IMG/VR virus record: IMGVR_UViG_3300009508_000011
Location: 124,001 to 188,000 of that record
Reading direction: 5' to 3' (one strand)
Length of the DNA: 64,000 nucleotides
Shown here: positions 1,073-54,162 of the stretch, one piece after another
Layout: every line of letters starts with the position of its first letter
Position numbering within the stretch: the stretch's first letter is position 1
The notes under the pieces: generated by a model
The model's input: the letters and a program-made list of their open reading frames with translations, nothing else
Told to the model about the DNA's origin: nothing
Database searches by the model: none
Position numbers and translations under genes: made by a program

Positions 1073-1960
1073 TTAACGTAGAAGACTGAGTATTGCTCGT
1101 TGGAACTGCTGGGCTGAATCACCCTTTGCTGAGCGTTGCAGCAATTTACCTATACGTGAGTTTCTTAAAGCTCTTGAATCAACGGCGTGGTAAATGCAAG
1201 CAATCCATGTGGGTGGCATTTCAAGTGCAACACCCATTACTTCAGAACCGTGCTGGGTAAACCAACCGTTAGCAAGGATGCTGTAGATTAAACCACTATT
1301 CATCTTAGCTAGGCGTGGGTTGTCTAGGTGCTGTGCAATATACATAGCTAGTTCATCAACAGAACTAAAGCGTAGTTGCTCAGGGAACCATTCTAACAAA
1401 CGCTGCGCTGGCACACGAGTAGCACGAGAAACTATAGCTACGTTACGCTGCCACACTTTATCATTTACTTCGCTTTCAATACAGCCAAGGTAGAACATAC
1501 CAGCAACGATAGCTAATTTAGCTTGTGTTTCTGGGTCAACGCCTAAACGATGAGCGATACCTTCAGAGAACCACTTAGTGTAAATCTCTAACGGTAGGTC
1601 AGAAATACTAAGTAAGTTATCGCGGAAGTCGTCATCGTTATTCCAGCTTAGTTCCAAAGCGGCACGTAGAACACGGAAATCGTATTCGGCTTTATCTTTA
1701 ATTCGATAGTCACCATTACTACTAGTAACAGAGATTAAACCACGAACATCGATATAAGCTGTGTCTTCAAAAATAACTGTGTGTCCAAAAACTGGTACTT
1801 CACTGTTCTTATCAATGAGGGTCTTGATAAATCCAAGACCTTTAGATTCCGCATTTCTTAATTGCCCTTGGGCACCAGCTATGCGTAATTCCTTGACAAT
1901 TTTGTCGGTGGAATATGAACGAAGCACCAATGCTTCGTATGGGTTATTATAGGGATACAT
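1073..1960 (-). CDS. Virion structural protein, phiKZ gp28-like
   Basis: Clean ORF divergent from the sheath gene. Start refined to MYPYNN (ATG 1960, GGAG upstream). Product call rests mainly on synteny. Confidence 0.55.
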   Translation of the reverse strand: MYPYNNPYEALVLRSYSTDKIVKELRIAGAQGQLRNAESKGLGFIKTLIDKNSEVPVFGHTVIFEDTAYIDVRGLISVTSSNGDYRIKDKAEYDFRVLRAALELSWNNDDDFRDNLLSISDLPLEIYTKWFSEGIAHRLGVDPETQAKLAIVAGMFYLGCIESEVNDKVWQRNVAIVSRATRVPAQRLLEWFPEQLRFSSVDELAMYIAQHLDNPRLAKMNSGLIYSILANGWFTQHGSEVMGVALEMPPTWIACIYHAVDSRALRNSRIGKLLQRSAKGDSAQQFQRAILSLLR

Positions 1961-2122
1961 TTTTCTCTCCGCTCCTATTATTAATAGTAGAGTCATAAGA
2001 ATGCGACCAAATTATTTTTTAACGGTAATAAAGGTACTATACTTATGACGGTCTATGGCAGCTAGCGGCAATAGGTCAGATTTACCCATTTCAATTTTTT
2101 TGCAAAAAAATGGAGTTCAATA

Positions 2123-16700: not shown

Positions 16701-17769
16701 GGTCGCTTGCATTAACCGTGGCTTGTTCGTCGAGCGTACCATCGCCAGTCGTTGCTTCGATAGTCTTGAAAGTGTTGGCCAGACGTATGGCGCGTTTATA
16801 TTCCGGTAGCGACATTTGACCAGAGTCTCTAAGTTCTCTGGCCTTGACCTCAACTGTAGCAGTGCGGTCATTAAGATAGACATTGGTAGATAAGTCCAAG
16901 TCTTCTTCTGTAAAGTCTTCTTCTGTTGCATTGGTAACAGTCTCCAATTGTTGAATCTTGGTGATGTAGTTAACAAAAGTCTTATCGAAGATTCCATTAA
17001 TGGATTCACCGTCGTCAAGCTTCTCTTGTTTCCACTGCTGGAACTCACCTAGATTAAGAACACTGAATTTACCACCACGAATGAACACAAGGTTTACGTA
17101 TCGGATATTATCACCAAGGATAGTATCTAATTCATGTACGCCCTGAGTACAATACTGCCAGAGGTAAAAGAAATTAAGAGATTCAGGTTTCTTGAACGCT
17201 TCTAGAGATTCTAGAGTAGGCTTCTTATTGAGAAGCTTAAACTCTTCTAGAGTAGGTAGAACATCAGGTATCTCTATATGGATAAATTGGTTACGTAAAG
17301 TATCACCAGTATACTTAGCAACGTTATCCCATAATGTACGGTTAAGGTTATTCCATTCGTACCAACTGGATAGGGCATTGCGAGTATAGCGATATAGGTG
17401 AGGAACTATTGCGTAGTTTATAACCACCAAGTTATTAGCGTCACGTACACCTTGTTCAAACTTTCTCAATTGACGAATCTTACGATTGCGTTTATGGTAA
17501 GCTTTTACACGTGAGCGTAATTCGGTAGTTCTTCGACGAGGTCTACCCTGCTCCGCCGTTAACTCTTCGATATGCCAACAATGACTAGAGTCACGTCCGT
17601 TAAACAACGGTCCGTCTTGGTCTGGACCATTATCAGTATCATCTGTAGGCATGTAGTGCAGTAGTGATTCTTTTGGAATAACTAAAGAAGTGACGTCAGT
17701 AAATATTGGAGATTTTAGTTTCTCAAAGTTACGTACGCCAAACTTCCTATAAAATTCTGGATAAAGCAT
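13798..17769 (-). CDS. rpoB: Virion RNA polymerase beta subunit, large part (phiKZ gp178-like)
   Basis: 1323 aa. Motifs NP...LKEKE.VT..G.GGRS, EAT.DSG.V, DDPKR.NF..IQ.SH, EDS and GVGDK...GNQLKT. Confidence 0.9.
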   Translation of the reverse strand: MLYPEFYRKFGVRNFEKLKSPIFTDVTSLVIPKESLLHYMPTDDTDNGPDQDGPLFNGRDSSHCWHIEELTAEQGRPRRRTTELRSRVKAYHKRNRKIRQLRKFEQGVRDANNLVVINYAIVPHLYRYTRNALSSWYEWNNLNRTLWDNVAKYTGDTLRNQFIHIEIPDVLPTLEEFKLLNKKPTLESLEAFKKPESLNFFYLWQYCTQGVHELDTILGDNIRYVNLVFIRGGKFSVLNLGEFQQWKQEKLDDGESINGIFDKTFVNYITKIQQLETVTNATEEDFTEEDLDLSTNVYLNDRTATVEVKARELRDSGQMSLPEYKRAIRLANTFKTIEATTGDGTLDEQATVNASDLVVPEWSAPELDGVLDKTMLKSSLKTMDSHYIEKVMEKDIASMVLNVQNTGIAVTGFKKETVVDAANKYDHYSIQFTPLGGKPSTVHVKLPSVDKNGKFTANGVTYHMAKQRGDLPIRKTKADTVALTSYYGKLFVTRSPKAVYDRSAWQRKKVIHMGVDDTNDVVTNIRQGDASNKSAKVPPVYSGMAKGVLGFTCNSGVMSYEYSKREELYGETILKKLERRGHVVCGKAKGDRFITLDNSGLYHYHGSDGSVDTIGGLASLLGTDLGREPNDMAEVKIYSTGIPAGVVLGYMLGLSKLLRILNAKTRSVPKGQRLELEDGEAGVVFKDETLVYNTDDPQVTMILNGFYEYRSAIKQFNRDEFDKKTVYQPVLESRGVGLRFIREMDLLQPMFIDPITDGILEERKEPRTFEGLVVKAVELLKDDRTPDETDTEYMRIKGYERMPGFIYKELIASIRKQQSQPMSSQSRIEMNPKAVWMDVLKDATTKTVEELNPIHNLKEKELVTYSGDGGRSARSMVASSRVYHQNDMGVISEATVDSGSVAINTYLSADPNFNSLRGTTKRVKAKDASSSQLLSTSAILSPGATSDDPKRTNFISIQHSHGVAADNYKVMPLTTGYEQVLAHRVDPMFAYVAEQDGKVTDIGESHLSVDYKDGTSTKIELGTIYGTVNGTNVPQRIASDLTKGQKFKAGHVLSYNTGFFERDYFDNTQVNWKAGALVNVALMESVDTLEDSCAVSEELGYGLSTEVTEVRNIVLDFNQGILNLVKVGDEVDLETILCTLEDPLTADNTLFDSDSAESLKALGQLNPKAKSKGVVEKIEVLYNGETSDMSKTLKTVINRADKERAERVKRLEIDGALTGQVKEPINVEGRRLVMDQAVIKVYITKSLPAGVGDKAVLGNQLKTIIGRVMTGTNETESGEPIDVIFGRQSIANRIVLSPDVMGTTNRVLEVLSKKVADTYFTNL

Positions 17770-19882: not shown

Positions 19883-22800
19883 ATGTCCGACGATTATGAC
19901 ATCGAAGATGATGGCTTTGATAGCTTTGATGATTTCGATGCTCCTGATTTCGACGGTGATGTCGGGGGCGGAAGTAAAGACCGTACACCCATCACGGTGG
20001 CGGCTACTAGCTTCACCGAAGCAGCTACTAGTAACCTATTAAGTGTTAACGCTGCGCAACGCATTGCCAGAAAGGGCTTACCTAAAGGATATAGCGAAGC
20101 TGCCGACCTTGTCGACGATGTAGCATTTGAGGCTTCTGACCTATACGATAAAGCCGAGAAAAGGTTAGAACCTGCTATTAAATCTGCCAAAGAAGCTACT
20201 CGTGGTCTTCTCCCTAAAGCTGAAGGTATTTTACCGAAAGGCGTCTACGAGAAAATAAACTCTTGGTCAGAGGACGATTCACGTCGTGGTAGTAATGTAA
20301 ATGCGGATGAGGAAAGTATAAGTACTGCCCTTAGTAGCATCTTTACTACGCAGATGGAAGAACAGGAAAGGGATAAGCAAGAAGAAAGAGTTCAGGGTGC
20401 GTTTAAAGACCAAGTCGAGAACCAACGACATGAACAAAGCGTAGATAAACTTTCACTTATCCAACAGTCTATGTCTAGACTTGTAGGGTATCAGGATAGT
20501 ATTACCGCTGCTTACCAAAAGAAATCCCTTGACTTACAATTCCGTCATTATTTTGCTGCTCGTGATTTACTCAAATTACAAACTGCTAGTAACACTGATG
20601 TAATCACAGCGTTAAACGATATCAAAACAAACACTGGTTTACCTGACTGGGTTAAAACTCAGAACTCAGAGAACTTCCAGTCTATGTTACAAGAACGTCT
20701 TATGGGCGGGACTGTTGATAACGTAAGTGACTACATGCAAAGCTTTCGCACTAATCTGATTAGTGGCGTTAAAGATAAAGTAATGGAGACAGTCGGTGAA
20801 GTAGCTGACGGTATCAGTGAAATATCTGGCGGTATTACACAGTTAAATGAAGCCTCTGAAATGATGGGTGGAATGGAAGATGGTCCTAAGGATTCTGGAG
20901 CTACTAAAGCTGCTGGCTTTGCCGGTGATGCTGCAGGTGGTGCCATATCTAATAAAATCATCGGTATGGCTGGTAAAGCCTTACAGAAAGAAACTGGGGC
21001 TAGTAAGTACATTGTAGAGAAAGGTCTAGCTGCTTCTAACATGGTTCGCGGTGCTGATGGTAAACTTAAAGAGTTTATCGACACTGCTGATGATAGAGAT
21101 GGCATTGCTGGTATGTTTGGTAGATTCCTTAAGGAAGCTGCCCCTACTCTTAATACTAGACCTGAAGTATTGCAGAATTTATCTAAGGATGCTACTGCTA
21201 GTGTTCAATGGGATGTATTGTCCCGTAGGACATTAATAGAAATAATTCCTGAGTACTTGGCACGCATTACCCAGAATACTGAATCTATGGCTACGGGTCA
21301 ACCAGCTGAGAAGATGGTGTTCAGTAAACTTAGTGAACGGTTTGTCACTGAGGGTGAGGCTGTTGCTGAAGCTACTGATAAGTTTGTTAAGCGTTCTGAA
21401 ATTACCGACTATCAAGAAAGGAATCAAAAGCTACTGAATAAAATATTTGGTGATGCTAAGATATCTGAAGAAGCAAGAGCAGTTATGTCCGAGCAGATTC
21501 ATACAGACCTTGACCGTGGTTGGAATATAGACCCTCGTCGTTATGTTGAGACTGGTGCATTCGAAAATAGATTTGACCGTGATGCAGTTGGTGAACTTCA
21601 GGAATTCTTCCGTGATAAGTTCAAGGCTAAAGACGTAGGTGAGGGCGGTAAGGAAGACTGGGAGTTTGATTTAAGCGAACAGAACCTGAAACAGATTGGA
21701 AACATCTTCAATGAAGGTAAGAATCTACAACAGGTTATTCCTAACATGCAAGGGGCTATTAACGAGTTCGTAGGGACTGGTGATAAAGACTTGTTACGTT
21801 CTACAGGATGGATTGATGATACATCGGGTAAAGACCAATTTAATCTGGAAAGAATGAATGGTTTACTCACTGGTCGTTTGTCTCTGGATGACCTACAGTC
21901 TGAATGGGATAGGTACTCTTTAAAAGAGGAACGTAAAGAAAATAGTACTAAGTGGAGAGAACAGGACAGAGGTGAGTGGCAATTGGGAGACCAACCACAG
22001 ACACCTACAGTTGAACGTACTCGTTCAGTTGAGCAATCCGTTACTCCAATGGCTGGTAAAGACTTAGATATAGTTTCACAACTTACTAGGGTACTTAACC
22101 AACATGCTGACAACAGTAAGGGTAGTTTGGATAAGTTATCATTATTAGTTAGTACTGGTACTGAAGCCCAAACTCTAACAAGTCAACAAGTAGGACTCCT
22201 AACGGAAATCCGTGACATACTTGCTACTCAACAGGTCAATGGTCTTTCTGCTGAAGAATCGGCAATGGGTGCTGAGCTACTTAAGAAATTAGGAGCTGGT
22301 GCTGGTATTGACCAACCATCACTGATGGGTAATCTATCTAGTAAAGTTATGGGTGCTGGTAAAGCTGGTATCGATATGCTTGGTAGTTACTATGGAATGT
22401 TGGGTAATGCTGCTGGGTCTGCCTTAAACTTTGCTAAAGAGAAAGGTTCTGCCGCACTAGGTTACTTAGGTGCTAAGAAAGATACCGTTGATGTATTCAT
22501 TGCCGGTATTAAGAAACCTGCTCTTAGGGCTGACTTTATAAAGGCTGGTAGATATGTCGATGTTGCTACTGGTAATGTCATCACTAACCTTAAAGATATA
22601 ACTGGTGCTGTTAAGGACTTGTCCACAGGTAATCTAGTTATAACTGAAGAAGACTATGAAAATGGTATTTTCGATGGTTCTGGTGAATCTTTAATCAGTA
22701 GACTTGGTACAGGTGCTAGAGATTTAGTATCTGGTGGTGTAGACATGCTAGGTGGTTACTATGGGTTCCTATTCAAGGGTGCTAGTAGTATCATTGGTGG

Positions 22801-25800
22801 TGTGAAGGAAAGAGCCATTGGCTTAGACCGTAAACTTAAAAACCAAGTCGATGTGTATGTTAAAAGTCGCATGGGGGATGGCCCTGCTTTATTAAGGACT
22901 AAATTACTACGTGGTGCTTACTTCGATAAGGATGGTAATTCGATATTCTCCATTGGGGACATCGATGGACCTGTCTACGATGAAGAAGGTAACATGGTTC
23001 TTACCGATGAAGATATTTCAGCTGGATTAGTTGACCCTCAGGGTGAAGAGATTCAAATTGCTGGATTATTCGGTAACGGCGTTGGTATGATTGGTTCTGG
23101 TATTGGGTTAGCAAAGACTGCTGGTTCTAAAGTGTGGGAAGCCTTAAAGGGTTACTACTCTGGAATTGGAAAAGCTGGTAAGAGTCTGCTAGATAGATTT
23201 AAGGGTGGTATTCCATCTATGGGTGGCGGTGATGTTGATGTAATGAACATCAGTGCTAACACAGTTTACCTTAATGGTAACATCCAACAATCTCCTGCGG
23301 AAGCTGCTGGTACAGCTGCACCTACCGTTAACGAAAATGTTAGCGATATTGGGGAGCAGTTGAAAGGTACTGCTACAAACATCAAAGACCGTGCTACTGA
23401 AGAAATAAGCGTTGCTGCTTCAAAGGCTAAAGATGTTGCCGATAAGGCTGTCGACAAAGTCAAGTCTGTAGATACAACCAAAGCTGAAGAGACTATCAAG
23501 GATGTTAAGAACAAAGCTACTGACAAGCTTGCTCAGGCTAAGGATAAACTACTTGGTAAGGAACTCGGTGAGGATACTGTATTAGTTGGTGATGCTGATG
23601 GTAACGTTAGTATTAAGACTGAGAACAATACAATCCCTGCTGGCGATGGTTCTACCAAAGGCTATATGGCTTCATTGCTAGCTTACTTCCATGGTAAGGA
23701 TGACCGTGAACTGAATGACACCGACGGTGATGGTTTCAGGGACGGTGGTTGGAGAAGTAAACTCTTCGGTAAAGATGAAGAGGAAGACGGAACCGACAAG
23801 GGTGATGGTCAATCTGAAACTAAACCTAAAGGAAAAGGTATGCTAGCTGGTTTAGCTGGTGCACTTGGGTTTGGTGGAGATGATGATGACGGTGGTAGTC
23901 TGGCTGGTGATATAGCATCTGAAGCTGCTGGTGAAGTTATCGGTGATAAAATATCCGGTAATGGTAAAGATGAAGATGGTGGTCGTAGAAGACGCAACGG
24001 TCCTAAGGTTAAACCAAAGGGTCGTATGGGTCGAGCATGGCAAGCCATTAAAGGTGTCGGTAGTGGGGCTAAGAAATTAGCTACGTCTGGTAAAGGCCTT
24101 GGTCTACTAGGTGGGACTGCTGCTACTATTAGTACCGCAGGTGGAATGCTCTCAGGGGCTGGTGGTTCTGTAGCTACTAAGATGGCTGCTACATCAGGAC
24201 TTAAGAAAGCCGCACTGTGGGGACTCAAGGGAGCATTAGGTTTAGCAGGTGGTATCTTAGCTGCGCCAGCAGTTGGAACAGCCTTAGCGATAGCCGGAGC
24301 TGCTTATACGGCATATGAAGTATTTAGCTTCTTTAGTAACCGTGAAGGCACTGAGCCATTGGAAGAATACCGCTTCCGTCAGTATGGTTTAGACCCAGAG
24401 GACAGTAGTCACCGTTCATTCATTCGTCAGTTAGAAGATGAAGCAATTGACCATGTTAATTATCGTGGTCAAGAGGGAACTGAGAATAGTCTAGATTTAC
24501 CAGAGGACTTCCATGATGACATTCTGGAACTATTGAATATAGACCTTAGTGTTCCTTACGAAGAAGACCCAGAGAACTCTAGACGAGCAAGTGCTTACGG
24601 TCAGTGGTTCAATAACAGATTTAAAGAGGTATTCCTTTTACATCATGGTATTTCCATGGCGTTGGACCCCGATGTTGATTTGTTGGACATTGATGATGAG
24701 TTAGATGACTCTAAGAAGTTAAAGTTTACTAAGGGAGCTTACTATCCTAACGATGGAACTGGTCGCAGCCCTTACTTCATTCCAGCAGATATGATGGAGG
24801 ATTATGAATCTGATGTCGGTTACGACAAGATTGATGAGATGAAGAAAGGTCTCATGGAAGAGTACAAGGAAGATGCTGAAGGCGAAGAGAAGACCAAAGA
24901 AGAAGGTTCTAGTTTCTTAAGTAAATTAGGAACAGCTGCTTTAGCGGTGACTCCAGTTGGTGCTTCATTAGCACTTAAGAAAGTCATCAGCGATAAACCT
25001 AAAACGGAAGACAAGGTTGCTGAAGTAGTTGAGGGTGATGGTGGAAAGGAAGTAGTTACTGAAAGAAAAAGAGCTGACTACGACGCCATAAAGGCAAAAG
25101 CCCTGTCCCGAATGTCCGATAAAACTAGGCAATATATAGAAGGTAAAACTGAAGAACGGTCTGCTAAGGCTGGTACTGAAGCAGTTACTAAACCACCTAT
25201 ATCTACAGCCACTGCTGTGAAGCGTAAGTTGAAGACTTCTAAGGTCTCTGGTAAGAGCGGGTTTATAATGCCCACTGATGGAAGAATAACTTCTAACTTT
25301 GGTAAGAACACCAACTCCGATACTGGTGAGGTTACTTTTAATTCTGGTATAGATATCGTTGCTCCTAAGGGAACAGAGGTATTGGCTACTCAGGGTGGGG
25401 TGATAACTCGTAGAGGATACTCTCGCAATGATGGTAATGTTATCTACATCGATAATGATGATGGTACACATAGCCGTTACGCTAATCTTGACAAATTCGA
25501 AGCTGGCTATACGGTTGGTGATAGAGTTGAACAAGGGGCTAAAATTGCAGAGGTTGGTGACACTGGTTGGGTTACTAGTCCAAGACTACACTTCGAGGTT
25601 CGTAAAAATGCGCACGATAAGAAATCTGCTGTAAATCCACTTGACCTATTCAAGGGTTCAGTTGGAACTAAGGCTAAGGAACAAGTCGCTGCTGCTATTA
25701 AAGAATCTAAAGAGCAAGTTAAGGTTAGTAAGACGCATGACCAGAAACGTGAGAACGTATCACGTAAGACCACTCCTTTAGTTAAACCTAGTTTAATGGT

Positions 25801-26293
25801 CCCTACTCAGGTAGGTACTAACACTAAACCAAGTTACACTGAAGATACCATTGCTGTAGCAGATACTGACACAGTAGTGGCAACTCCTAAGTCCAAACTT
25901 AACATGGCTCCCGCGAGTCCTATTAGGAAAGGAACTAAGGAAGATAGTGTTGTAGTTGAAGGTGAAGTAATTCAGCAGAGACGTGCACAGTTAAGTCAGG
26001 AGAACGCTAACGTTCGTAGTGAAAAGCAGTTAGAGGCTATCGGCATGTTAATGTCGGAACAGTTGAAGACTCAGCAACGAATGGTTGACGTACTACAAGA
26101 GGTGGCTACCAATACCAAGGCTACGGCTGAAGGTGTACATAAGCAACCTCAATCGACTACTATCGAGGGTGAAGCAACCCAAGTTAAAAAGCCGGTACAA
26201 CCTAACTTATCAGTGAAGCAACTAAGTGGTCTAATGAACCAAGGTAAATCTAAATCAGTTTCTTACCCTCTACTTATGGGTCGAAACAAGTAA
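19883..26293 (+). CDS. Giant tail protein (tape-measure/lysin-like, phiKZ gp181-like) with degenerate M23 domain
   Basis: 2136 aa, divergent from the vRNAP operon as in phiKZ. Helical and Gly/Ala-rich segments, a hydrophobic AAPAVGTALAIAGAAY stretch, and an M23/LytM-like domain at about 25260-25620. Confidence 0.8.
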   Translation: MSDDYDIEDDGFDSFDDFDAPDFDGDVGGGSKDRTPITVAATSFTEAATSNLLSVNAAQRIARKGLPKGYSEAADLVDDVAFEASDLYDKAEKRLEPAIKSAKEATRGLLPKAEGILPKGVYEKINSWSEDDSRRGSNVNADEESISTALSSIFTTQMEEQERDKQEERVQGAFKDQVENQRHEQSVDKLSLIQQSMSRLVGYQDSITAAYQKKSLDLQFRHYFAARDLLKLQTASNTDVITALNDIKTNTGLPDWVKTQNSENFQSMLQERLMGGTVDNVSDYMQSFRTNLISGVKDKVMETVGEVADGISEISGGITQLNEASEMMGGMEDGPKDSGATKAAGFAGDAAGGAISNKIIGMAGKALQKETGASKYIVEKGLAASNMVRGADGKLKEFIDTADDRDGIAGMFGRFLKEAAPTLNTRPEVLQNLSKDATASVQWDVLSRRTLIEIIPEYLARITQNTESMATGQPAEKMVFSKLSERFVTEGEAVAEATDKFVKRSEITDYQERNQKLLNKIFGDAKISEEARAVMSEQIHTDLDRGWNIDPRRYVETGAFENRFDRDAVGELQEFFRDKFKAKDVGEGGKEDWEFDLSEQNLKQIGNIFNEGKNLQQVIPNMQGAINEFVGTGDKDLLRSTGWIDDTSGKDQFNLERMNGLLTGRLSLDDLQSEWDRYSLKEERKENSTKWREQDRGEWQLGDQPQTPTVERTRSVEQSVTPMAGKDLDIVSQLTRVLNQHADNSKGSLDKLSLLVSTGTEAQTLTSQQVGLLTEIRDILATQQVNGLSAEESAMGAELLKKLGAGAGIDQPSLMGNLSSKVMGAGKAGIDMLGSYYGMLGNAAGSALNFAKEKGSAALGYLGAKKDTVDVFIAGIKKPALRADFIKAGRYVDVATGNVITNLKDITGAVKDLSTGNLVITEEDYENGIFDGSGESLISRLGTGARDLVSGGVDMLGGYYGFLFKGASSIIGGVKERAIGLDRKLKNQVDVYVKSRMGDGPALLRTKLLRGAYFDKDGNSIFSIGDIDGPVYDEEGNMVLTDEDISAGLVDPQGEEIQIAGLFGNGVGMIGSGIGLAKTAGSKVWEALKGYYSGIGKAGKSLLDRFKGGIPSMGGGDVDVMNISANTVYLNGNIQQSPAEAAGTAAPTVNENVSDIGEQLKGTATNIKDRATEEISVAASKAKDVADKAVDKVKSVDTTKAEETIKDVKNKATDKLAQAKDKLLGKELGEDTVLVGDADGNVSIKTENNTIPAGDGSTKGYMASLLAYFHGKDDRELNDTDGDGFRDGGWRSKLFGKDEEEDGTDKGDGQSETKPKGKGMLAGLAGALGFGGDDDDGGSLAGDIASEAAGEVIGDKISGNGKDEDGGRRRRNGPKVKPKGRMGRAWQAIKGVGSGAKKLATSGKGLGLLGGTAATISTAGGMLSGAGGSVATKMAATSGLKKAALWGLKGALGLAGGILAAPAVGTALAIAGAAYTAYEVFSFFSNREGTEPLEEYRFRQYGLDPEDSSHRSFIRQLEDEAIDHVNYRGQEGTENSLDLPEDFHDDILELLNIDLSVPYEEDPENSRRASAYGQWFNNRFKEVFLLHHGISMALDPDVDLLDIDDELDDSKKLKFTKGAYYPNDGTGRSPYFIPADMMEDYESDVGYDKIDEMKKGLMEEYKEDAEGEEKTKEEGSSFLSKLGTAALAVTPVGASLALKKVISDKPKTEDKVAEVVEGDGGKEVVTERKRADYDAIKAKALSRMSDKTRQYIEGKTEERSAKAGTEAVTKPPISTATAVKRKLKTSKVSGKSGFIMPTDGRITSNFGKNTNSDTGEVTFNSGIDIVAPKGTEVLATQGGVITRRGYSRNDGNVIYIDNDDGTHSRYANLDKFEAGYTVGDRVEQGAKIAEVGDTGWVTSPRLHFEVRKNAHDKKSAVNPLDLFKGSVGTKAKEQVAAAIKESKEQVKVSKTHDQKRENVSRKTTPLVKPSLMVPTQVGTNTKPSYTEDTIAVADTDTVVATPKSKLNMAPASPIRKGTKEDSVVVEGEVIQQRRAQLSQENANVRSEKQLEAIGMLMSEQLKTQQRMVDVLQEVATNTKATAEGVHKQPQSTTIEGEATQVKKPVQPNLSVKQLSGLMNQGKSKSVSYPLLMGRNK

Positions 26294-47380: not shown

Positions 47381-48046
47381 CTAATCTTCTAATCCAGTCT
47401 TGAAGAAGTCAGGATTGATGATGTTGATATGGTCTTCATGTGTCACATGAACTTTCTCACCATGTAGCAACAACACAATTGACTCACCTGGGGCAGGCCA
47501 CTCATCATCATTCAGTTCCGAATGTCTCTCTCTGAAGTCTTCTAAACCTTCATGGGTTAGGTCACACACTCTATAAGCACCGTGTGTTTCCCAATGAACA
47601 ATGGGTGCAAGTGGGCGAATTGGTTCGTTAGTTCCCCAAATCTTTATAACCTTACCCTTAACATCGCTGTTAGGGACATTGTGGTTAGTAACGAGTAGAT
47701 ACTGATTACCCTTACGTTCGATAGACCAAGAGTTCTTCACGAACTCAGCTAAGGTACTACTGAATGCCATCTTCTCAGCTATACTACTAGTTAAGTAGAT
47801 ACGTCCTTCAAGAGACTCACGGAGAGTCTCCTCGTCAAACTTACCAATGGCAAGCTTACCCTGAATCTCAATACTGAACCCAGCACCTTTGGTGCAGATA
47901 TAGTAAGCATTGAAATCACGACGTACATCTGGAGTAGCGTTCTGTAAAGAAACACTCCATTCTGCAGTTTCAGGAATAGCCCCACGAATGATATCATGTT
48001 CGCCATCTTTCACTTCTTGTAGTTTACGAGGTTTAAATTCTGACAT
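47381..48046 (-). CDS. Hypothetical protein sharing a C-terminal module with 49280-50449
   Basis: 221 aa with AGGAG RBS. Confidence 0.7.
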   Translation of the reverse strand: MSEFKPRKLQEVKDGEHDIIRGAIPETAEWSVSLQNATPDVRRDFNAYYICTKGAGFSIEIQGKLAIGKFDEETLRESLEGRIYLTSSIAEKMAFSSTLAEFVKNSWSIERKGNQYLLVTNHNVPNSDVKGKVIKIWGTNEPIRPLAPIVHWETHGAYRVCDLTHEGLEDFRERHSELNDDEWPAPGESIVLLLHGEKVHVTHEDHINIINPDFFKTGLED

Positions 48047-48074
48047 TGTATTCTCCTTTTAGATTTAATGTCGG

Positions 48075-48749
48075 TTAGATTGATAGATTGTTTATACGGT
48101 AGTTTAGGATAGTATCCAAATATACCTCTGAGTCATCGAGTATGAAGTAAACACGATGTCCGTCAGTTTGTGGTTTATGTACTTGATAGTCCCCGTCTAA
48201 AACATAGCCACGGTATACGAACGTATACTTCACATCGTTATGTTTAAACAGCGCACAGTTAAACTTAAGTTCATCCATTGAGAGATTAAAGAGTGGATAA
48301 GTTCGATTAATCTCTTCGAAAGTATTCTTGTCACAGGCACCAATGGGTAAGGAGTCAAACGCCAGTAAACTATTAAGTAGTTGGCAACTGCTACCCAGCA
48401 CTTTATTACTAGACCACCTGACAACCACTTCACGATGATAACTTAAAGTCTTTACTAACTTACCAGACTCTGAGTTACCACCATCCATTTCAAGTACGTA
48501 CTTGAAGTTCAATGACTTTGTTAACATGCTACTAAAACGTGGACACTCTTCACCAATGTAGATACATGGAGAACGTGAAAGTATAGATTCAACAGTATCG
48601 TAATCCTTACCAGTGTCCATCACTCTAGCTGACAATACCCACCCAAGTGCTTTGTTTCTTTCACCAATAACTCGGTAGCGGAAAGCATTAACCGCGTAGT
48701 TAGATTCAATATGTTTTAAGCGCATTGTAAGCCCCCTGTTAGCCAACAA
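48075..48749 (-). CDS. Hypothetical protein
   Basis: ~220 aa. The start may be MRLKH. Confidence 0.6.
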   Translation of the reverse strand: MLANRGLTMRLKHIESNYAVNAFRYRVIGERNKALGWVLSARVMDTGKDYDTVESILSRSPCIYIGEECPRFSSMLTKSLNFKYVLEMDGGNSESGKLVKTLSYHREVVVRWSSNKVLGSSCQLLNSLLAFDSLPIGACDKNTFEEINRTYPLFNLSMDELKFNCALFKHNDVKYTFVYRGYVLDGDYQVHKPQTDGHRVYFILDDSEVYLDTILNYRINNLSI

Positions 48750-49248
48750 CTAATGAATGGTTACCAATGGGTCTAGCTGTCTTAACAAACAGACATAGAC
48801 GCTGTGAGGACCACACATCAAATAGAACCACTTCTTCCCACTCACGCGATGGAAAGTCCAGTTTACGAGTACGATTAATGTCTAGACGGAACAACTTAAG
48901 AATTCTAGATTCTTCAGTATCTAGGTTCTTAATGGTTATTTGTAATAGATGCCAAGCACTATCCAACTCGTCAGCTATATTACATAACTCGTAAATTATC
49001 TCCTCAACCTCCCTATTATCGATAGTAGAGGTAGCTGGGTGACCGCTATCAATAGCCGGTTGAAACGCAGGTAGGAATCTAGATAACTCAGCTAACATTT
49101 CATCAGCTCCCACAATCTTCTTATCTTCTTTCTTACGCCACGGTACCACGCCCTCAGTTGAGTCCGCCATGGTTATTTTTGTTATTTCTACTCGTTCGTT
49201 AGATTGATACATTTTCTTTTTCCTGTTAGTAAAAGATTTAAACGGCAT
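48739..49248 (-). CDS. Hypothetical protein
   Basis: ~160 aa. The start may be MYQSN. Confidence 0.6.
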   Translation of the reverse strand: MPFKSFTNRKKKMYQSNERVEITKITMADSTEGVVPWRKKEDKKIVGADEMLAELSRFLPAFQPAIDSGHPATSTIDNREVEEIIYELCNIADELDSAWHLLQITIKNLDTEESRILKLFRLDINRTRKLDFPSREWEEVVLFDVWSSQRLCLFVKTARPIGNHSLVVG

Positions 49249-49279
49249 AAGTGAGGGTCCAACGACCCCCGCTTACATT

Positions 49280-50449
49280 TTAACCAGCATCGAATCCGTT
49301 AAGGATACTTTGCCATTCTTCGTAAGTTAACTCTACGTCCCCAAAAGGAGTAGGTAACATTACTTCTTCACCTTCTTCTGGCCAGTCTACAGTTGGAATG
49401 TAGTTGACTAGGTTGGTTTCAATTTCCTGACGTTGCTCAATAGACAATTCAGATAATCGCATTTTAGGAAACTCCTCAGTAAGTAGGTCCATATGCCTTA
49501 CAGGATTGAATTTAATAGATGGATACTTCCAACCATTCAACTCTAGGTCACATGCTTTAGTTAAAAGTGCAGATAGCAGCTCTTGGGTCAACCCGTAGAA
49601 CTTTCTACGTAACTCAAAACCAGTGGTTAAACATAAGGCTTTGAACGTGTCTTTGGACAACGCTGCATTCTCATACACAGTAGACCATTTATAATTAAGT
49701 TCACGCAGTATACGATGTCTTGTATCCCAATCGCTAACGTCGAACTCATCGCTAATGATTAGTATGGCACTACAGCCACTTAGATTACCAGTGACTATTA
49801 TTTTCCAGCCATCTGGACCAACTTTAGAAAGTGGTTCACGAACCTTAAATACTGAAAGACTACCCTGAGACATAGTTTCCCTAGGTAAAGGTGCTAGTCT
49901 ACCACCCTGTACAGGTACCCAGTTATCCAAACCTAGTAAACGCATACATGTTCTATCGCTCACTACTTCAACAACGTATGAACTCTTAACACTACTACCA
50001 TCAGGTACGAATAACCGAACGGCATCTACTGTGTAGTCGTATGTAACAGCATCGTCGTGTTCCACTATTCGGTTAACTTGGTCGTCTTCATATTTTGATT
50101 TAGATATACTTGGTGGAATCTTAGCATTGATGCTTGTCTCATATTCAGCTATGTCCATCTTAGTGGCTACGTTAACCCATTGTTCCAACTGAGCAGTATT
50201 CACTATCTGGTCATTCCAAGCCTGCGATAAATCAACTACGTCACTAGTGGCAAAGCCTACATTAGGCTTCATCCAAATGAGACAGTCCAAATAACGCACA
50301 GCTGTTTGACCATTACTTAATTCAGGAGACAACTCCCAACGTATGGCGAAATCTAACACATCCAACTTATCAAACAAGTCAGTGTTATCTGGTAAGTCAC
50401 CCAATTCAACTCTTCGTAGTGAACCTCTTGCTATTCTAATCTGAGACAT
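49280..50449 (-). CDS. Hypothetical protein with CNF1-like 'GNLSGC' motif
   Basis: 389 aa containing IIVTGNLSGCSAILI. Confidence 0.65.
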   Translation of the reverse strand: MSQIRIARGSLRRVELGDLPDNTDLFDKLDVLDFAIRWELSPELSNGQTAVRYLDCLIWMKPNVGFATSDVVDLSQAWNDQIVNTAQLEQWVNVATKMDIAEYETSINAKIPPSISKSKYEDDQVNRIVEHDDAVTYDYTVDAVRLFVPDGSSVKSSYVVEVVSDRTCMRLLGLDNWVPVQGGRLAPLPRETMSQGSLSVFKVREPLSKVGPDGWKIIVTGNLSGCSAILIISDEFDVSDWDTRHRILRELNYKWSTVYENAALSKDTFKALCLTTGFELRRKFYGLTQELLSALLTKACDLELNGWKYPSIKFNPVRHMDLLTEEFPKMRLSELSIEQRQEIETNLVNYIPTVDWPEEGEEVMLPTPFGDVELTYEEWQSILNGFDAG

Positions 50450-50919
50450 TAACTTATTCCTTTTATAAAATTAACTACCACGTTACCAAGGGTAACCGCA
50501 ACCACAACCGATAGGAGTAATATAGGAACTAGGTTAGACTTCTTTTTTACTTCACCGGTATTTGGTTTAGTACCAAGACCATAAGCACTCTTAATCAGAC
50601 CTACTTCTACATCTCTACGTTCCCATCTAGCTTTATTAGCTTCTGCAAATATTTCTAAATGTCTACCCCAGCTTGTAATAACCTTTTCAAGTTCAGAGTC
50701 TTCAACCTTATACTTGTTAGGTACCTGAATGAAACATTCCATGGATGGAGTAGTTACGTGACTACCAATTCTACCACCATACGGAACGAACCAAGCTTTG
50801 ATATTCATTTCTGACACACCGCCTATTACAGCTTTGCGTTCAATTTCTTTTGCTTCCTGTATTACTTTAATGGTACCTAGAGACATGGTTAGTCCATGGT
50901 ACGATACGTCAACAATCAT
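50449..50919 (-). CDS. Hypothetical protein with C-terminal TM segment
   Basis: 156 aa ending LVPILLLSVVVAVTLGNVVV. First gene after the early promoter. Confidence 0.7.
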   Translation of the reverse strand: MIVDVSYHGLTMSLGTIKVIQEAKEIERKAVIGGVSEMNIKAWFVPYGGRIGSHVTTPSMECFIQVPNKYKVEDSELEKVITSWGRHLEIFAEANKARWERRDVEVGLIKSAYGLGTKPNTGEVKKKSNLVPILLLSVVVAVTLGNVVVNFIKGIS

Positions 50920-50952: not shown

Positions 50953-50974
50953 CATTAGAATAATATATGCGTGA
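50953..50974 (-). promoter_or_regulatory. Putative early promoter
   Basis: TCACGCATATATTATTCTAATG on the minus strand. Confidence 0.65.
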
Positions 50975-51018
50975 AAAAAGATGGAGCTTACGCCCCATCT
51001 AATTAGTTGGTTATGTAT

Positions 51019-51543
51019 TTATTGTTGTGCAGCTAGTGCTGCATCATCTTCAGCCTTACGAGCATCAGCTTTTTCCTGAGTCCATAAGTACCAGTTACTT
51101 GCTTGCATTTCCTGCCAATCAGGATACCAGCCATTAAATACTTCACCTTCTTCAGTTACTATGTCAAATAAGAATGCATTGTATTTATCAGTTACGCTAG
51201 TAGGGTATTCCGTTAAACTACCGTCTGCTATTTCCGACAATGGTGGGATTGTTTTCTTAGTTGTACCTAACTTCACATGCATGAAGTATGTTCTCCAGTT
51301 GCTGCAACCAACCTTATGTCCTTGTAACATTAAATGTAATGCTTCAGGGAAAGTTAGTTCAGTTTCAGGATTGTATTCAGAATCGAATACAGATTTAGGT
51401 ATCCAAGTAACGGAAGCATCCGCACTTGTTACTTCATAACCGTCAGCACCTTCTGCATGACCGGTCATTGAGGGATACTGTGGTGTTGCAGCTACTTGCA
51501 TAGGAACTGCGTCGACTACTTTGATGGCAACGTGTTTAGTCAT
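51019..51543 (-). CDS. Two-domain protein with C-terminal DUF2829/Tad2-like domain
   Basis: N-terminal 'K.V.A.PM...GY.V......W.PK..F...Y' module, then LTFPEAL..M..G.KV...W...GW.P....M.A..W. Confidence 0.6.
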   Translation of the reverse strand: MTKHVAIKVVDAVPMQVAATPQYPSMTGHAEGADGYEVTSADASVTWIPKSVFDSEYNPETELTFPEALHLMLQGHKVGCSNWRTYFMHVKLGTTKKTIPPLSEIADGSLTEYPTSVTDKYNAFLFDIVTEEGEVFNGWYPDWQEMQASNWYLWTQEKADARKAEDDAALAAQQ

Positions 51544-51593
51544 CAGATTGTCCTTTTGTTGTGATTAAAATTAAATTTACCGAGGAGTAAACA

Positions 51594-52621: not shown

Positions 52622-52966
52622 CTAACCTATCTCAGCATGTTCCATATCTGAACGTGTGATTTGGTAACGTAGTTTATTTTCACGCGATGGGTATAACCCA
52701 TGGTTTAACAACAGTTGAAACCAATCGGTGTGTTTTGATTCCCCTTCCAAATTAACCACTATCGCCACCGTACCTAATTCCTTAGCTATGGTAAAGATGC
52801 GACCGAAGTAATATTGAAAGCGCATGAAGAGGTCATCGGTACGTTTCATGTTTACAGTAATGACGCCTTCAATAGACCCGTCTACGATAAACCCCTCATT
52901 AATAGATTCTTGATTAAGCGCACCATTCTCAATTAGTTGAGATTGTAATTCTGTTTTCTCTGGCAT
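52622..52966 (-). CDS. Hypothetical protein
   Basis: 114 aa in a minus-strand early cluster. Confidence 0.6.
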   Translation of the reverse strand: MPEKTELQSQLIENGALNQESINEGFIVDGSIEGVITVNMKRTDDLFMRFQYYFGRIFTIAKELGTVAIVVNLEGESKHTDWFQLLLNHGLYPSRENKLRYQITRSDMEHAEIG

Positions 52967-52979
52967 TTGTAACTACCTT

Positions 52980-53273
52980 TTAATTATTATAGTCTTCGTT
53001 TAATTCAGCAAGTATAGTATCAATTGTATCAACCAACTCAATGTCTGTATCTTGAGCTTTCCACAAACGGTAACGTATGTGGGTGTCAGAGTAACCTCTG
53101 TTCTCAAACTCTGCATATAGCAAAGGGTGAAGAAGTTTAACTGCTGACTTAACTGATACATCAAAGAAGGCACCGTCTGCTTCAGGGATACCGTTAGTTG
53201 ACTGCTCCCACGATTGGGTGGTTACAAATTGTTCTATTACTGGATTTAACTCGACGTTATTTACTAGGGACAT
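52980..53273 (-). CDS. Hypothetical protein
   Basis: 97 aa. Confidence 0.6.
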   Translation of the reverse strand: MSLVNNVELNPVIEQFVTTQSWEQSTNGIPEADGAFFDVSVKSAVKLLHPLLYAEFENRGYSDTHIRYRLWKAQDTDIELVDTIDTILAELNEDYNN

Positions 53274-53319
53274 ATTTTCTCTTCCTGTTGTTTAGAGATT
53301 GTTATTATTAAATAATGGT

Positions 53320-53673
53320 CTAGGCTACTAACTTAGACCAGTTGTTTTTGTAACTCCACACCGGAGTCTTTAGTACAGGCATTTCGGACACATCACCAAA
53401 CTCTTGGTCATTGATAATCTCCTTAACCACCTTAAGTACACTCATGGTCTTATCAGTACAATTAAAGTCACCGATAATTTTCTCACGAGTATCTGGAATT
53501 ATTACTAAGTCATCGATGTCTTCTACTGACACCTGTTGACCCTCACCTAACATGGTGTAGACATAGTAACAAATATTATCGTTATCACCTACAGACATAC
53601 GCTGTTCGATGTATACCTTAGGAGCAAACTTCTTTTCCTTCATGTAGCTTACTATACAGCTCTTGCTATACAT
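53320..53673 (-). CDS. Hypothetical protein
   Basis: 117 aa. Confidence 0.6.
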   Translation of the reverse strand: MYSKSCIVSYMKEKKFAPKVYIEQRMSVGDNDNICYYVYTMLGEGQQVSVEDIDDLVIIPDTREKIIGDFNCTDKTMSVLKVVKEIINDQEFGDVSEMPVLKTPVWSYKNNWSKLVA

Positions 53674-53730
53674 ACTCTTTTCCTTTAATTTAAGAGAACG
53701 GGCGTGGTAGCATATGCTACCACTATTAAA

Positions 53731-54162
53731 CTACAACCATACGTTGGAGTTTACCTTACCCGGTGTTGTATGCCATTCTGTTGCTAGACAGGCATAGAGT
53801 TTAGTATTGACGTCTTCTGTAGTGGATGCTTTAGATAAGATATCAAACTTATCAATTATATCCATAGCCAGCGACGACATAATGGTTTTGAAAGTACGTA
53901 GGAAATCCATAATACTAACAGCAGATAAAGTAGGTTTCTTATCAACCACGAAATGGAACTCGTTATCACGTAAACATATCTGCAATGCATCGATAGTCAT
54001 GTGAGGTCGGTTTACCAATTCTAGGTTATCAAATCCACCTAACTTTAAAAGTGTATCGTTACACACTAAAGTGGCAACGTGTAGAACACCATTAAGTTCT
54101 TTACACTGTAGTACTACCCTGCCTTGTGGTACAGGTACATTTACTCTGATTAACTTTTCCAT
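53731..54162 (-). CDS. Hypothetical protein
   Basis: 143 aa with GGAG RBS. Confidence 0.6.
   Translation of the reverse strand: MEKLIRVNVPVPQGRVVLQCKELNGVLHVATLVCNDTLLKLGGFDNLELVNRPHMTIDALQICLRDNEFHFVVDKKPTLSAVSIMDFLRTFKTIMSSLAMDIIDKFDILSKASTTEDVNTKLYACLATEWHTTPGKVNSNVWL

What the first reader, a model, noticed from the sequence alone, without database searches (positions are those of the whole stretch)
51019..51543. Divergent Tad2/DUF2829-like sponge fused to a second small phage domain
Seen: C-terminal LTFPEALHLMLQGHKVGCSNW...GWYPDWQEMQASNW and N-terminal KVVDAVPM...GYEV...WIPKSVFDSEY. Known: DUF2829 includes Tad2, a sponge for Thoeris gcADPR and other cyclic nucleotide signals, with family pattern F.EAL..LK.G.KV.R.GW...W.PSQ.D.LA.DW. 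Here the R.GW and D.LA.DW positions read CSNW and EMQASNW. Inference: an anti-defence sponge, possibly with altered ligand specificity. It is a stand-alone transcription unit.
Basis: partly seen in the sequence, partly recalled or inferred. Interest (0 to 1): 0.6.

Follow-up and report, generated by a model that had tools for sequence, protein, structure and literature searches.

The report
Divergent two-domain Tad2-like phage protein
A marine jumbo phage carries a small, separately transcribed gene that joins an unnamed but very widespread phage module to a divergent copy of the Tad2 'sponge' fold, which phages use to soak up bacterial alarm molecules; the fold and the predicted self-assembly are kept, but the usual ligand-contact residues are replaced, so what it binds is unknown.

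Summary
The ORF (51019-51543, minus strand, 174 aa) is real and the quoted motifs are present. Residues 64-153 match Pfam Tad2-like above the curated cut-off. The AlphaFold model (pLDDT 92.8) matches only solved Tad2 structures. A four-copy fold supports Tad2-like self-assembly (0.77 against 0.00 for controls). The two pocket tryptophans are kept, but the polar gcADPR contacts known from HgmTad2 and SPO1 Tad2 are replaced by residues rare in the family (N to R, G to T, S to D, T to Q, D to E).

The N-terminal 61 residues are a genuine separate module. The fusion is not unusual: 148 of the 153 proteins held after the exhaustive search share this architecture. The module has no Pfam family and no functional annotation. 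It occurs alone (73-78 aa genes) and is fused to Tad2, Sequestin and Acb4-like sponge domains.

The gene lies divergent from a baseplate gene in a phiKZ-like marine phage. A hairpin plus T-run follows it in three related phages, and a metatranscriptome contig covers its 3' end.

Best reading: a nucleotide-signal sponge with changed specificity. No ligand is shown.

The parts
51019..51543 (-). Complete CDS, 174 aa plus stop (protein P0001)
   Evidence: ORF list and translation. Orthologues of 95%, 61% and 50% identity exist in other marine contigs. dN/dS is 0.37 against the 95% allele.
51361..51543 (-). N-module, residues 1-61: three strands plus one helix, an unnamed family
   Evidence: It folds alone at pLDDT 92.7. 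There is no Pfam or NCBIfam hit. The family profile matches 51364-51543 at E 9.7e-23 (the profile includes this sequence). The family has 6,199 clusters, found alone or with PF11195, PF21825 or PF13876.
51085..51354 (-). Tad2-like (PF11195/DUF2829) domain, residues 64-153, with a roughly 33-residue insertion (93-125)
   Evidence: Pfam 29.6 bits against a cut-off of 25. Foldseek hits are 8wjd, 8kbj, 8kbi, 8wje, 8sme, 8v3e and 9eib at probability 1.0. Pocket positions were mapped.
51022..51078 (-). Clade-specific C-terminal helix, residues 156-174 (W.WTQE.AD...)
   Evidence: Helix 156-173 is predicted at pLDDT about 97. It is present in P0001-P0005 and P0008 and absent from canonical long Tad2 proteins, which end just after the DW motif.
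51544..51593 (-). 50-nt divergent intergenic region with the gene's leader and ribosome-binding site
   Evidence: The sequence TTAATCA(C/A)AACAAAAGGACAA..ATG is conserved in L003 and L004. No sigma-70-like promoter was found here.
50973..51000 (-). Terminator-like hairpin (9 bp stem, 4-nt loop) plus T-run, starting 18 nt after the stop codon
   Evidence: Terminator scan. A hairpin plus T6-7 sits at the same place in L003 and L004 with different stem sequences. The metatranscriptome contig 50993-51153 ends within the hairpin.
50960..50969 (-). CATATATTAT motif directly after the terminator: a candidate promoter for the next gene, not part of this gene
   Evidence: It is conserved in the window, L003 and L004 and lies 48 nt upstream of the next start codon. 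There are only 5 such motifs in the window.

Best explanation
The gene encodes a small cytoplasmic anti-defence protein of the 'long Tad2' type. Protomers assemble into a Tad2-like homo-oligomer, most likely a tetramer built around helix alpha1. The pockets at the protomer interfaces sequester a nucleotide-derived immune signal made by the host, so that the host effector is never switched on. In this clade the two tryptophan walls of the classic pocket are kept (W83, W139), but the polar contacts are exchanged: R84 for Asn, T85 for Gly, D142 for Ser, Q144 for Thr, E145 for Asp. The ligand, or the way it is held, probably therefore differs from 3'cADPR binding by SPO1 Tad2 and HgmTad2. The conserved N-module takes part in the oligomer interface. 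It either stabilises the assembly or provides a further binding site.

Shown: family membership, fold, the residue changes, the architecture, conserved gene order, the terminator, purifying selection, and the gene's 3' end recovered from an RNA-library assembly (not proof of transcription). Inferred: oligomeric state (prediction only), sponge activity, changed specificity, and the role of the N-module.
For: - PF11195 scores above the gathering cut-off, and all 42 aligned relatives hit PF11195.
- The AF2 model has pLDDT 92.8 and pTM 0.80. All 16 best PDB matches are Tad2 sponges, at probability 1.0 and target TM-score 0.56-0.83. BFVD matches are Tad2-like proteins, several from jumbo phages.
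- The four-copy fold scores ipSAE 0.77 against a best control of 0.00. The runs agree in at least 68% of contacts and partner pLDDT is at least 75. The mark was reached by 21 of 30 solved homo-pairs and 0 of 23 solved single chains, and this calibration used two copies, not four. The interface uses alpha1 (63-73), the pocket loops 80-84 and 139-147, and N-terminal residues 1-13.
- Literature contacts: W25/N26/W73/T78/D79 in SPO1 Tad2 (10.1101/2023.05.01.538930), and W21/N22/G23/W87/L88/S90/T92/D93 in HgmTad2 (10.1101/2023.11.15.567273). These were mapped with the alignments and the family counts.
- The Tad2 family is already known to have members binding His-ADPR, N7-cADPR, cUMP/cCMP and cGG/cGAMP.
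- dN/dS is 0.37 against 0.06-0.14 for three neighbouring genes: constrained but fast-evolving.
- The gene is its own unit, with a conserved leader and terminator.
- In a marine metatranscriptome, the only piece of the 2.2 kb stretch recovered is the gene's 3' end.
Against: - No ligand binding or defence inhibition has been measured for this protein or for any long Tad2 with this N-module. None of the Tad2 homologues tested in Table S2 of 10.1101/2025.08.24.671296 carries it.
- The Pfam score is only 4.6 bits above the cut-off.
- In HgmTad2, the W21A/N22A and S90A/T92A/D93A mutants lose gcADPR binding. This protein naturally differs at four of those five positions, so the pocket may be non-functional rather than retargeted.
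- The oligomer pass may reflect the model's memory of solved Tad2 tetramers.
- The host and its defence systems are unknown.
- The RNA evidence is a single contig from one sample. It cannot show strand or level, and DNA carry-over is not excluded.
Confidence: 0.5

Rival explanations
1. It is an ordinary Thoeris type I sponge. Despite the substitutions it still binds 3'cADPR/gcADPR in the canonical pocket, as most Tad2 proteins do.
For: Both tryptophans that give most of the van der Waals contact are kept (W83, W139), and Asp to Glu at 145 is conservative. The close relatives P0003 and P0004 keep Asn at position 84 and Asp at 145. Li et al. estimate that only about 1% of Tad2 proteins lack a functional gcADPR site.
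Against: N22, G23, S90 and T92 equivalents are all replaced by residues that are rare or absent at those columns in about 100-150 relatives. Alanine mutants at these positions abolish binding in HgmTad2. ModTad2 shows that divergent Tad2 proteins can lose type I inhibition.
Confidence: 0.15
2. The Tad2 fold here has lost nucleotide binding and serves another role, for example as a protein-binding inhibitor or as a structural or virion-associated protein of the jumbo phage.
For: The gene sits next to a baseplate assembly gene in a structural region. The best, though non-significant, fold match of the N-module is the phage L capsid decoration protein 6E3C. A DUF2829 protein was first reported as the anti-CRISPR AcrIIA7. 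The pocket residues have diverged.
Against: The gene is on the opposite strand with its own terminator, so it is not part of the structural operon. The fold and the predicted oligomer interface, including the pocket loops, are retained. The 6E3C match has E 1.5, and the independent VIA search gives only generic small barrels at Z 4 or less. The N-module's fusion partners are sponge domains, not structural proteins.
Confidence: 0.2
3. The N-module is the active part. It is itself an undescribed signal-binding (sponge) domain, and the divergent Tad2 domain mainly supplies oligomerisation.
For: The N-module is a very large family, with 6,199 clusters in a length-limited search. It is found alone as 73-78 aa genes inside phage contigs, and is fused to Tad2, Sequestin and Acb4-like domains. 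The same pattern led to the discovery of Sequestin (PMC12265669). N-modules 80% identical to each other sit on different sponge domains. In the four-copy model, residues 1-13 pair across protomers.
Against: There is no experimental data. In this clade the most conserved loop of the canonical module (RGDYNxYRGWxIPxDENP) is itself replaced. The fold is a generic small barrel with no pocket shown. It may be only a dimerisation or solubility tag.
Confidence: 0.14
4. It is not a real gene, only a chance ORF.
For: None beyond the small size.
Against: There are conserved orthologues with conserved gene order, a ribosome-binding site and a terminator, dN/dS below 1, a confident fold and a Pfam match.
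Confidence: 0.01

Closest known systems
HgmTad2 (AcrIIA7) and SptTad2: long-insertion Tad2 sponges (PDB 8KBI-8KBM, 8WJC, 8WJD)
   Same: They are the best sequence and fold matches. They share the alpha1 plus beta-sheet core and a large insertion between beta2 and the next core strand (about 33 residues here, 35-41 there). The NGW motif, with the Asn that contacts cGG (N85 to N137), and the aromatic at F70 (Y121) are kept.
   Different: They are single-domain proteins of about 100 aa without the N-module or the C-terminal helix. Their gcADPR contacts N22, G23, S90, T92 and D93 read R, T, D, Q and E here. The equivalent of R31 is uncertain (K91 or G93, depending on the alignment) and is not conserved in P0003.
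SPO1 Tad2 (PDB 8SME/8SMF/8SMG, 8WJE), the founding gcADPR sponge
   Same: Same fold (target TM-score 0.67-0.78), same predicted alpha1-centred assembly, and both pocket tryptophans kept.
   Different: It is 89 aa with a short insertion and no N-module. N26, T78 and D79 are replaced here.
ModTad2/MoTad2, Tad2_70 and Tad2_71: Tad2 proteins with other specificities (His-ADPR, cUMP/cCMP, N7-cADPR)
   Same: They set the precedent that divergent Tad2 proteins retarget to other immune signals and use more than one pocket. They are also fold matches (8v3e, 9eib).
   Different: They are single-domain proteins with no particular sequence similarity to this clade. No specificity can be transferred from them.
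Canonical 'long Tad2' proteins (PHROG 872; e.g. P0062, P0084), annotated only as DUF2829 proteins
   Same: Same two-domain architecture over the full length (PHROG 872 E 9e-12).
   Different: They keep GWNG and GWLASQTDMLAEDW and the N-module loop RGDYNxYRGW. They lack the C-terminal helix. They are untested as well.
Fused sponges (Tad2-Sequestin, Acb4-Tad2, Sequestin-Acb4; PMC12265669)
   Same: One polypeptide combines a sponge domain with another small phage module, and the modules are shuffled between partners.
   Different: The partner here is neither Sequestin (alpha-helical, PF21825) nor Acb4 (PF13876). It is an unnamed beta-rich module of unknown activity.
PGDYG repeat (PF14083) and the phage L Dec OB-fold (6E3C)
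   Same: The hairpin-plus-helix unit, residues 33-59, resembles the GDxxVT...F...Y unit of PGDYG repeats. Dec is the top Foldseek row for the N-module.
   Different: Both resemblances are weak: hhalign probability 64% over 27 columns, and Foldseek E 1.5. There is no Pfam PGDYG hit. Neither family has a known function that helps here.

Membership tests
Tad2-like / DUF2829 (PF11195) | Match to the family HMM above the curated gathering score | tested here: met
   29.6 bits for the whole protein and 30.9 bits for residues 60-174, against a cut-off of 25. The six-frame genome search gives 30.4 bits.
Tad2-like / DUF2829 (PF11195) | Tad2 fold: N-terminal helix alpha1, antiparallel beta-sheet, variable insertion, short helix before the last strand | tested here: met
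   AF2 secondary-structure elements are H65-73, E77-80, E89-92, the insertion, E126-129, E135-139, H143-146 and E151-154. The 16 best PDB matches are all Tad2, at probability 1.0.
Tad2-like / DUF2829 (PF11195) | Homotetramer with pockets at protomer interfaces | tested here: inconclusive
   Prediction only: ipSAE 0.77 against a best control of 0.00, at least 68% contact agreement, pLDDT at least 75. The interface includes alpha1 and the pocket loops. It may reflect memory of solved Tad2 tetramers, and the calibration was for two copies.
Tad2 gcADPR-binding sponges (SPO1 Tad2, HgmTad2) | Two pocket tryptophans (W21/W87 in HgmTad2; W25/W73 in SPO1) | tested here: met
   W83 and W139 are kept.
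Tad2 gcADPR-binding sponges (SPO1 Tad2, HgmTad2) | Polar contacts N22, G23, S90, T92 and D93 (N26, T78 and D79 in SPO1) | tested here: not met
   They read R84, T85, D142, Q144 and E145. Only Asp to Glu is conservative. Each residue is rare at its column in about 100-150 relatives.
Tad2 gcADPR-binding sponges (SPO1 Tad2, HgmTad2) | Binds gcADPR and inhibits Thoeris | not testable with these tools
   This needs biochemistry or plaque assays.
Tad2 cyclic-dinucleotide binders (HgmTad2, SptTad2) | Large insertion (35-41 aa) with R31, S47, F70 and N85 contacts | tested here: inconclusive
   The insertion is about 33 aa. N137 (N85) and Y121 (F70) fit. The R31 equivalent is ambiguous (K91 or G93) and is Glu in P0003. 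S47 cannot be aligned.
Sequestin (PF21825), as the identity of the N-module | HMM match; alpha-helical protein of about 60-80 aa | tested here: not met
   There is no Pfam hit for residues 1-62 even at E 10. The module has three strands and one helix. In P0265 the N-module (1-66) and PF21825 (79-140) are separate.
PGDYG (PF14083), as the identity of the N-module | HMM match over the roughly 100-aa domain | tested here: not met
   There is no Pfam hit. Only a 27-33 residue local resemblance to the repeat's end was found.
Phage L Dec-like OB-fold (6E3C), as the identity of the N-module | Significant structural or sequence match | tested here: not met
   Foldseek E 1.5, probability 0.30. Dec is absent from the VIA list, whose best Z is 4.0. 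The profile search against PDB sequences finds nothing.

The most novel reading that the evidence does not exclude
The unnamed N-module (about 60 aa, consensus MKxYIGTKxIxAxPM...GYxVxYxDGYxSWSPKxVFExAY) is a further, so far undescribed family of phage immune-signal binders, or a general accessory domain of sponges. It occurs alone and is shuffled among Tad2, Sequestin and Acb4-like domains. The window protein is a doubly divergent member in which both the N-module loop and the Tad2 pocket have been retargeted to a signal used by marine hosts of jumbo phages.
Probability: 0.2. Interest if true: 0.8.

Novelty: new variant of a known kind. Interest (0 to 1): 0.58.

Why it matters
Sponge proteins are a main way for phages to defeat signalling-based immunity (Thoeris, CBASS, Pycsar). 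Each divergent pocket has so far pointed either to a new specificity or to a new immune signal.

This gene gives a concrete, testable case. It has a Tad2 fold whose classic polar contacts are replaced. It lies in a phiKZ-like marine jumbo phage, a lineage that includes nucleus-forming phages. In such phages the DNA is shielded from DNA-targeting defences, so signalling defences would matter more.

More broadly, following this gene exposed a very large, unnamed module that travels alone or with at least three sponge families. The largest functional survey of Tad2 tested no protein carrying it. That survey states that it removed Tad2 proteins with certain extra domains (PF21825, PDB 6E3C). Whether the 6E3C filter caught this module is not shown. 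Testing the module could add a new player to phage counter-defence.

Tried and rejected
- Nucleotide search of 4.5 kb around the gene against GenBank phages: no match. The protein search found only Ruegeria phage 45A6, at 25% identity.
- NCBIfam: nothing.
- Pfam on the N-module, and on stand-alone N-modules, even at E 10: nothing meaningful.
- N-module profile against PDB sequences: chance-level hits only.
- Foldseek on the N-module alone: nothing at E 0.001 or below. VIA-align wide: best Z 4.0, generic Tudor/chromo/SH3-like barrels.
- The language-model Atlas search of residues 1-62 gave only leads below 0.9.
- The PGDYG lead came from a 3,743-aa repeat protein. The profile-profile probability is only 64% over 27 columns, so it is not accepted as homology.
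- Literature searches for PGDYG and for a two-domain Tad2 gave nothing useful. TadIV-1 was checked and is an unrelated two-helix protein.
- The N-module motif was searched in the supplementary tables of 10.1101/2025.08.24.671296 with no occurrence. Reading Table S2 showed no tested Tad2 with this module.
- No sigma-70 promoter was found in the 50-nt intergenic region. The TATATTA(T/C) motif after the terminator is too rare in the window (5 copies) to call a general promoter.
- The phage genome was searched for PF21825, PF13876 and PF24729 with no match, but the tool's controls were silent too, so absence is not shown.
- RNAalifold on the three terminators mis-registers one sequence, so its pair counts understate the hairpins. 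Each sequence forms its own hairpin.
- A cyclic-dinucleotide pocket like that of HgmTad2 was considered and left open as weak (see the membership test).

Full report
**Observation.** The window holds an ORF at 51019..51543 on the minus strand, 174 aa, with an ATG start and an AAAGGA ribosome-binding site 7 nt upstream. The window is part of a 206,117-bp virus record with direct terminal repeats. This is the record's only Tad2-like locus.

**Family and fold of the C-terminal domain.**
- Residues 64-153 match Pfam PF11195 (Tad2-like, formerly DUF2829) at 29.6 bits against a gathering score of 25. The domain alone scores 30.9 bits.
- phmmer against PDB sequences finds SptTad2 (8wjd, E 0.008) and HgmTad2/AcrIIA7 (8kbi, E 0.12).
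- An AlphaFold2 model built on 42 relatives is confident: pLDDT 92.8, pTM 0.80.
- In Foldseek against the PDB, all 16 best matches are Tad2 structures (SptTad2, HgmTad2, SPO1 Tad2, ModTad2). They have probability 1.0 and target TM-scores of 0.56-0.83. The next hits are at E about 1.
- BFVD gives Tad2-like proteins, several from jumbo phages such as PaBG, Simmy50, RisingSun and JA11.
- Membership of the Tad2-like family by sequence and fold is therefore met, although the sequence score is close to the threshold.

**The ligand pocket.** The literature gives the gcADPR contacts. In SPO1 Tad2 they are W25, N26, W73, T78 and D79 (10.1101/2023.05.01.538930). In HgmTad2 they are W21, N22, G23, W87, L88, S90, T92 and D93. 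The W21A/N22A and S90A/T92A/D93A mutants of HgmTad2 lose binding (10.1101/2023.11.15.567273). The table maps these with the HMMER alignments. Family counts come from the relatives aligned (about 150 for columns 80-85, about 100 for columns 137-151).

| HgmTad2 residue | Window residue | Commonest residue at that column in the family |
|---|---|---|
| W21 | W83 (kept) | W 140 |
| N22 | R84 | N 83; R not among the six commonest |
| G23 | T85 | G 80; T 9 |
| W87 | W139 (kept) | W 91 |
| L88 | Y140 | L 47 |
| S90 | D142 | S 74; D 5 |
| T92 | Q144 | T 41, S 16 |
| D93 | E145 | D 93; E 8 |

- The strongly conserved Arg at column 80 (130 of 152 relatives) is Cys here. The conserved Asp of the final DW motif (94 relatives) is Asn. 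These two changes occur together in P0001-P0004, which suggests a lost salt bridge. That is my inference.
- The closest relatives do not all share the changes. P0003 and P0004 keep Asn 84 and Asp 145.
- The Asn that contacts cGG in HgmTad2 (N85) is kept as N137, which only 9 relatives have. F70 corresponds to Y121. The Arg 31 equivalent is ambiguous, so a dinucleotide pocket remains only a weak possibility.

**Oligomer.** Tad2 sponges are tetramers, with their pockets at the protomer interfaces. A four-copy fold of the full protein gave ipSAE 0.77 against a best control of 0.00.
- The runs agreed in at least 68% of contacts, and partner pLDDT was at least 75.
- The mark was reached by 21 of 30 proteins solved as homo-pairs and by 0 of 23 solved as single chains. 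That calibration used two copies, not four.
- The interface uses helix alpha1 (63-73, residue 66 against residue 66), the pocket loops 80-84 and 139-147, the insertion, and the N-terminal strand (residues 1-13, residue 7 against residue 7).
- This supports Tad2-like assembly in which the N-module takes part. It may also reflect the model's memory of solved Tad2 tetramers.

**The N-terminal module.**
- Residues 1-61 have no Pfam or NCBIfam match. They fold alone with pLDDT 92.7 as three strands and a helix.
- The exhaustive profile search found 794 cluster representatives at E 0.001 or below. Of the 153 proteins then in hand, 148 have the N-module followed by the Tad2 domain. All 42 aligned ones hit PF11195. 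PHROG 872 covers both domains. The fusion is therefore the normal architecture of a large 'long Tad2' group, not a peculiarity of this gene.
- A shape search of the ESM Atlas found the module's fold (TM-score 0.69-0.79 by query, 48-60 of 61 residues aligned). The matching clusters carry Tad2-like, Sequestin (PF21825), Phage_gp49_66 (PF13876, the Acb4 family), Acb2_Tad1_hairpin, or no Pfam domain.
- Sequence searches confirm this. N-modules 80-82% identical to that of P0062 sit on either PF11195 or PF21825. P0265 and P0177 are N-module 1-66 plus Sequestin 79-140, at E about 1e-19.
- The N-module profile finds 6,199 clusters in a length-limited search. By my count, the best 120 comprise 56 with PF11195, 26 with PF21825, 1 with PF13876, and 37 with no domain at only 67-112 aa.
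- Three of the short proteins were checked. They are complete genes of 74-78 aa inside contigs of 28-49 kb, among small accessory genes. One lies 2 kb from a Lockin sponge gene.
- PHROG matches of the stand-alone proteins are all 'unknown function'.
- Tal et al. (PMC12265669) found Sequestin through exactly this pattern: mostly stand-alone, often fused to known sponges. Sequestin is alpha-helical, so the N-module is a different entity. It is also none of the sponge families recognised in 2026: Tad1, Tad2, Acb2, Acb4, Sequestin, Lockin and TadIV-1.
- Its fold is a generic small barrel. VIA gives Z 4.0 or less. The top Foldseek row is the phage L Dec protein 6E3C, at E 1.5.
- Hadary et al. state that they removed Tad2 proteins carrying PF21825 or PDB 6E3C as an extra domain. 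None of their tested Tad2 homologues carries the N-module. It is possible, but not shown, that their 6E3C filter removed this class.
- A local resemblance to the end of PGDYG repeats exists but is weak.
- In the window protein's clade, the most conserved loop of the canonical module (RGDYNxYRGWxIPxDENP) is replaced by a clade-specific VAATPQYPSMxGH. The clade also adds a C-terminal helix.

**Genomic setting and expression.**
- The upstream neighbour on the other strand is a baseplate assembly protein (PHROG 3216, E 4e-79). Its nearest relatives are phiKZ-like jumbo phages, led by Vibrio phage pVa-21 at 38.5% identity.
- The DNA occurs in seawater, aquaculture, sand and sponge metagenomes from about 15 studies.
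- Two short contigs that encode the 61% and 50% homologues show the same arrangement. The baseplate gene is divergent (82-84% identical N-terminus) and the leader is conserved. A hairpin plus T-run follows the stop codon with different stem sequences, followed by a CATATATTAT motif.
- The terminator-like hairpin is at 51000..50979.
- In one marine metatranscriptome sample (two runs), the only part of the 2.2 kb stretch recovered is an identical 165-nt contig at 50993-51153. This is the gene's 3' end running into the hairpin. It fits transcription and termination there. Contigs cannot show strand, ends or level, and DNA carry-over is possible.
- No promoter was identified.
- Against the 95%-identical allele on a 146-kb TARA contig, the gene has 10 non-synonymous and 7 synonymous differences, giving dN/dS 0.37. 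Three neighbouring genes give 0.06-0.14. The gene is therefore constrained but evolves faster than its neighbours. The numbers are small.

**Interpretation.** The best-supported reading is a Tad2-type homo-oligomeric sponge whose classic pocket has been remodelled, so that its ligand probably differs from 3'cADPR. The Tad2 family already includes binders of His-ADPR, N7-cADPR, cUMP/cCMP and cyclic dinucleotides. The rivals are:
- retained gcADPR binding;
- loss of nucleotide binding with a new role;
- the N-module being the active part.

None of these can be separated without biochemistry.

**Novelty.** The Tad2 domain makes this a new variant of a known kind. The more interesting lead is the unnamed N-module, which is abundant, autonomous and shuffled among sponge families.

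Noticed in passing
P0006 (metagenomic protein), residues about 1400-3260: This is a 3,743-aa protein with 19 PGDYG (PF14083) repeats of 129 aa, an annexin repeat and a C-terminal Zeta_toxin/AAA_33 kinase-like domain. Each repeat ends in a unit that resembles residues 26-59 of the window protein.
   Followed up: partly
window 50960-50969 (-); L003 about 785-796; L004 about 960-972: A CATATATTAT motif directly follows the terminator in all three related phages, 48 nt before the next gene's start codon. It is a candidate phage promoter for the downstream genes. There are only five TATATTA(T/C) motifs in the whole window.
   Followed up: partly
window 50449-50919 (-) compared with L003 865-1278: The 156-aa gene downstream of the Tad2-like gene (hydrophobic C-terminus, no family match) is missing in the related contig L003. 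There the next gene is the homologue of window 49280-50449 (52% identity). So an accessory gene is gained or lost at this spot.
   Followed up: partly
L010 3001-3237 and 5423-5734: A stand-alone 78-aa N-module gene lies about 2 kb from a Lockin (PF26760) sponge gene in a 49-kb phage contig.
   Followed up: no
window 51161-51439 (+): A 92-aa antisense ORF lies wholly inside the Tad2-like gene. Nothing supports it, and it is most likely a chance frame.
   Followed up: no
window 13798-17769 (-), 19883-26293 (+): The window holds very large ORFs of 1,323 and 2,136 aa, consistent with a phiKZ-like jumbo phage. Most small ORFs around the finding (47381-50919, 52622-54162) have no PHROG match at all.
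   Followed up: no
window 51019-51543 compared with L006 1501-2025: The non-synonymous differences between the two alleles include I128M and V135I. These lie at or next to positions aligned to the adenine-contact residues M76 and V84 of HgmTad2 (I128 aligns with M76; V135 aligns with I83, beside V84). A148T lies in the pocket helix. This may be a hint of pocket tuning between strains, from very few changes.
   Followed up: partly
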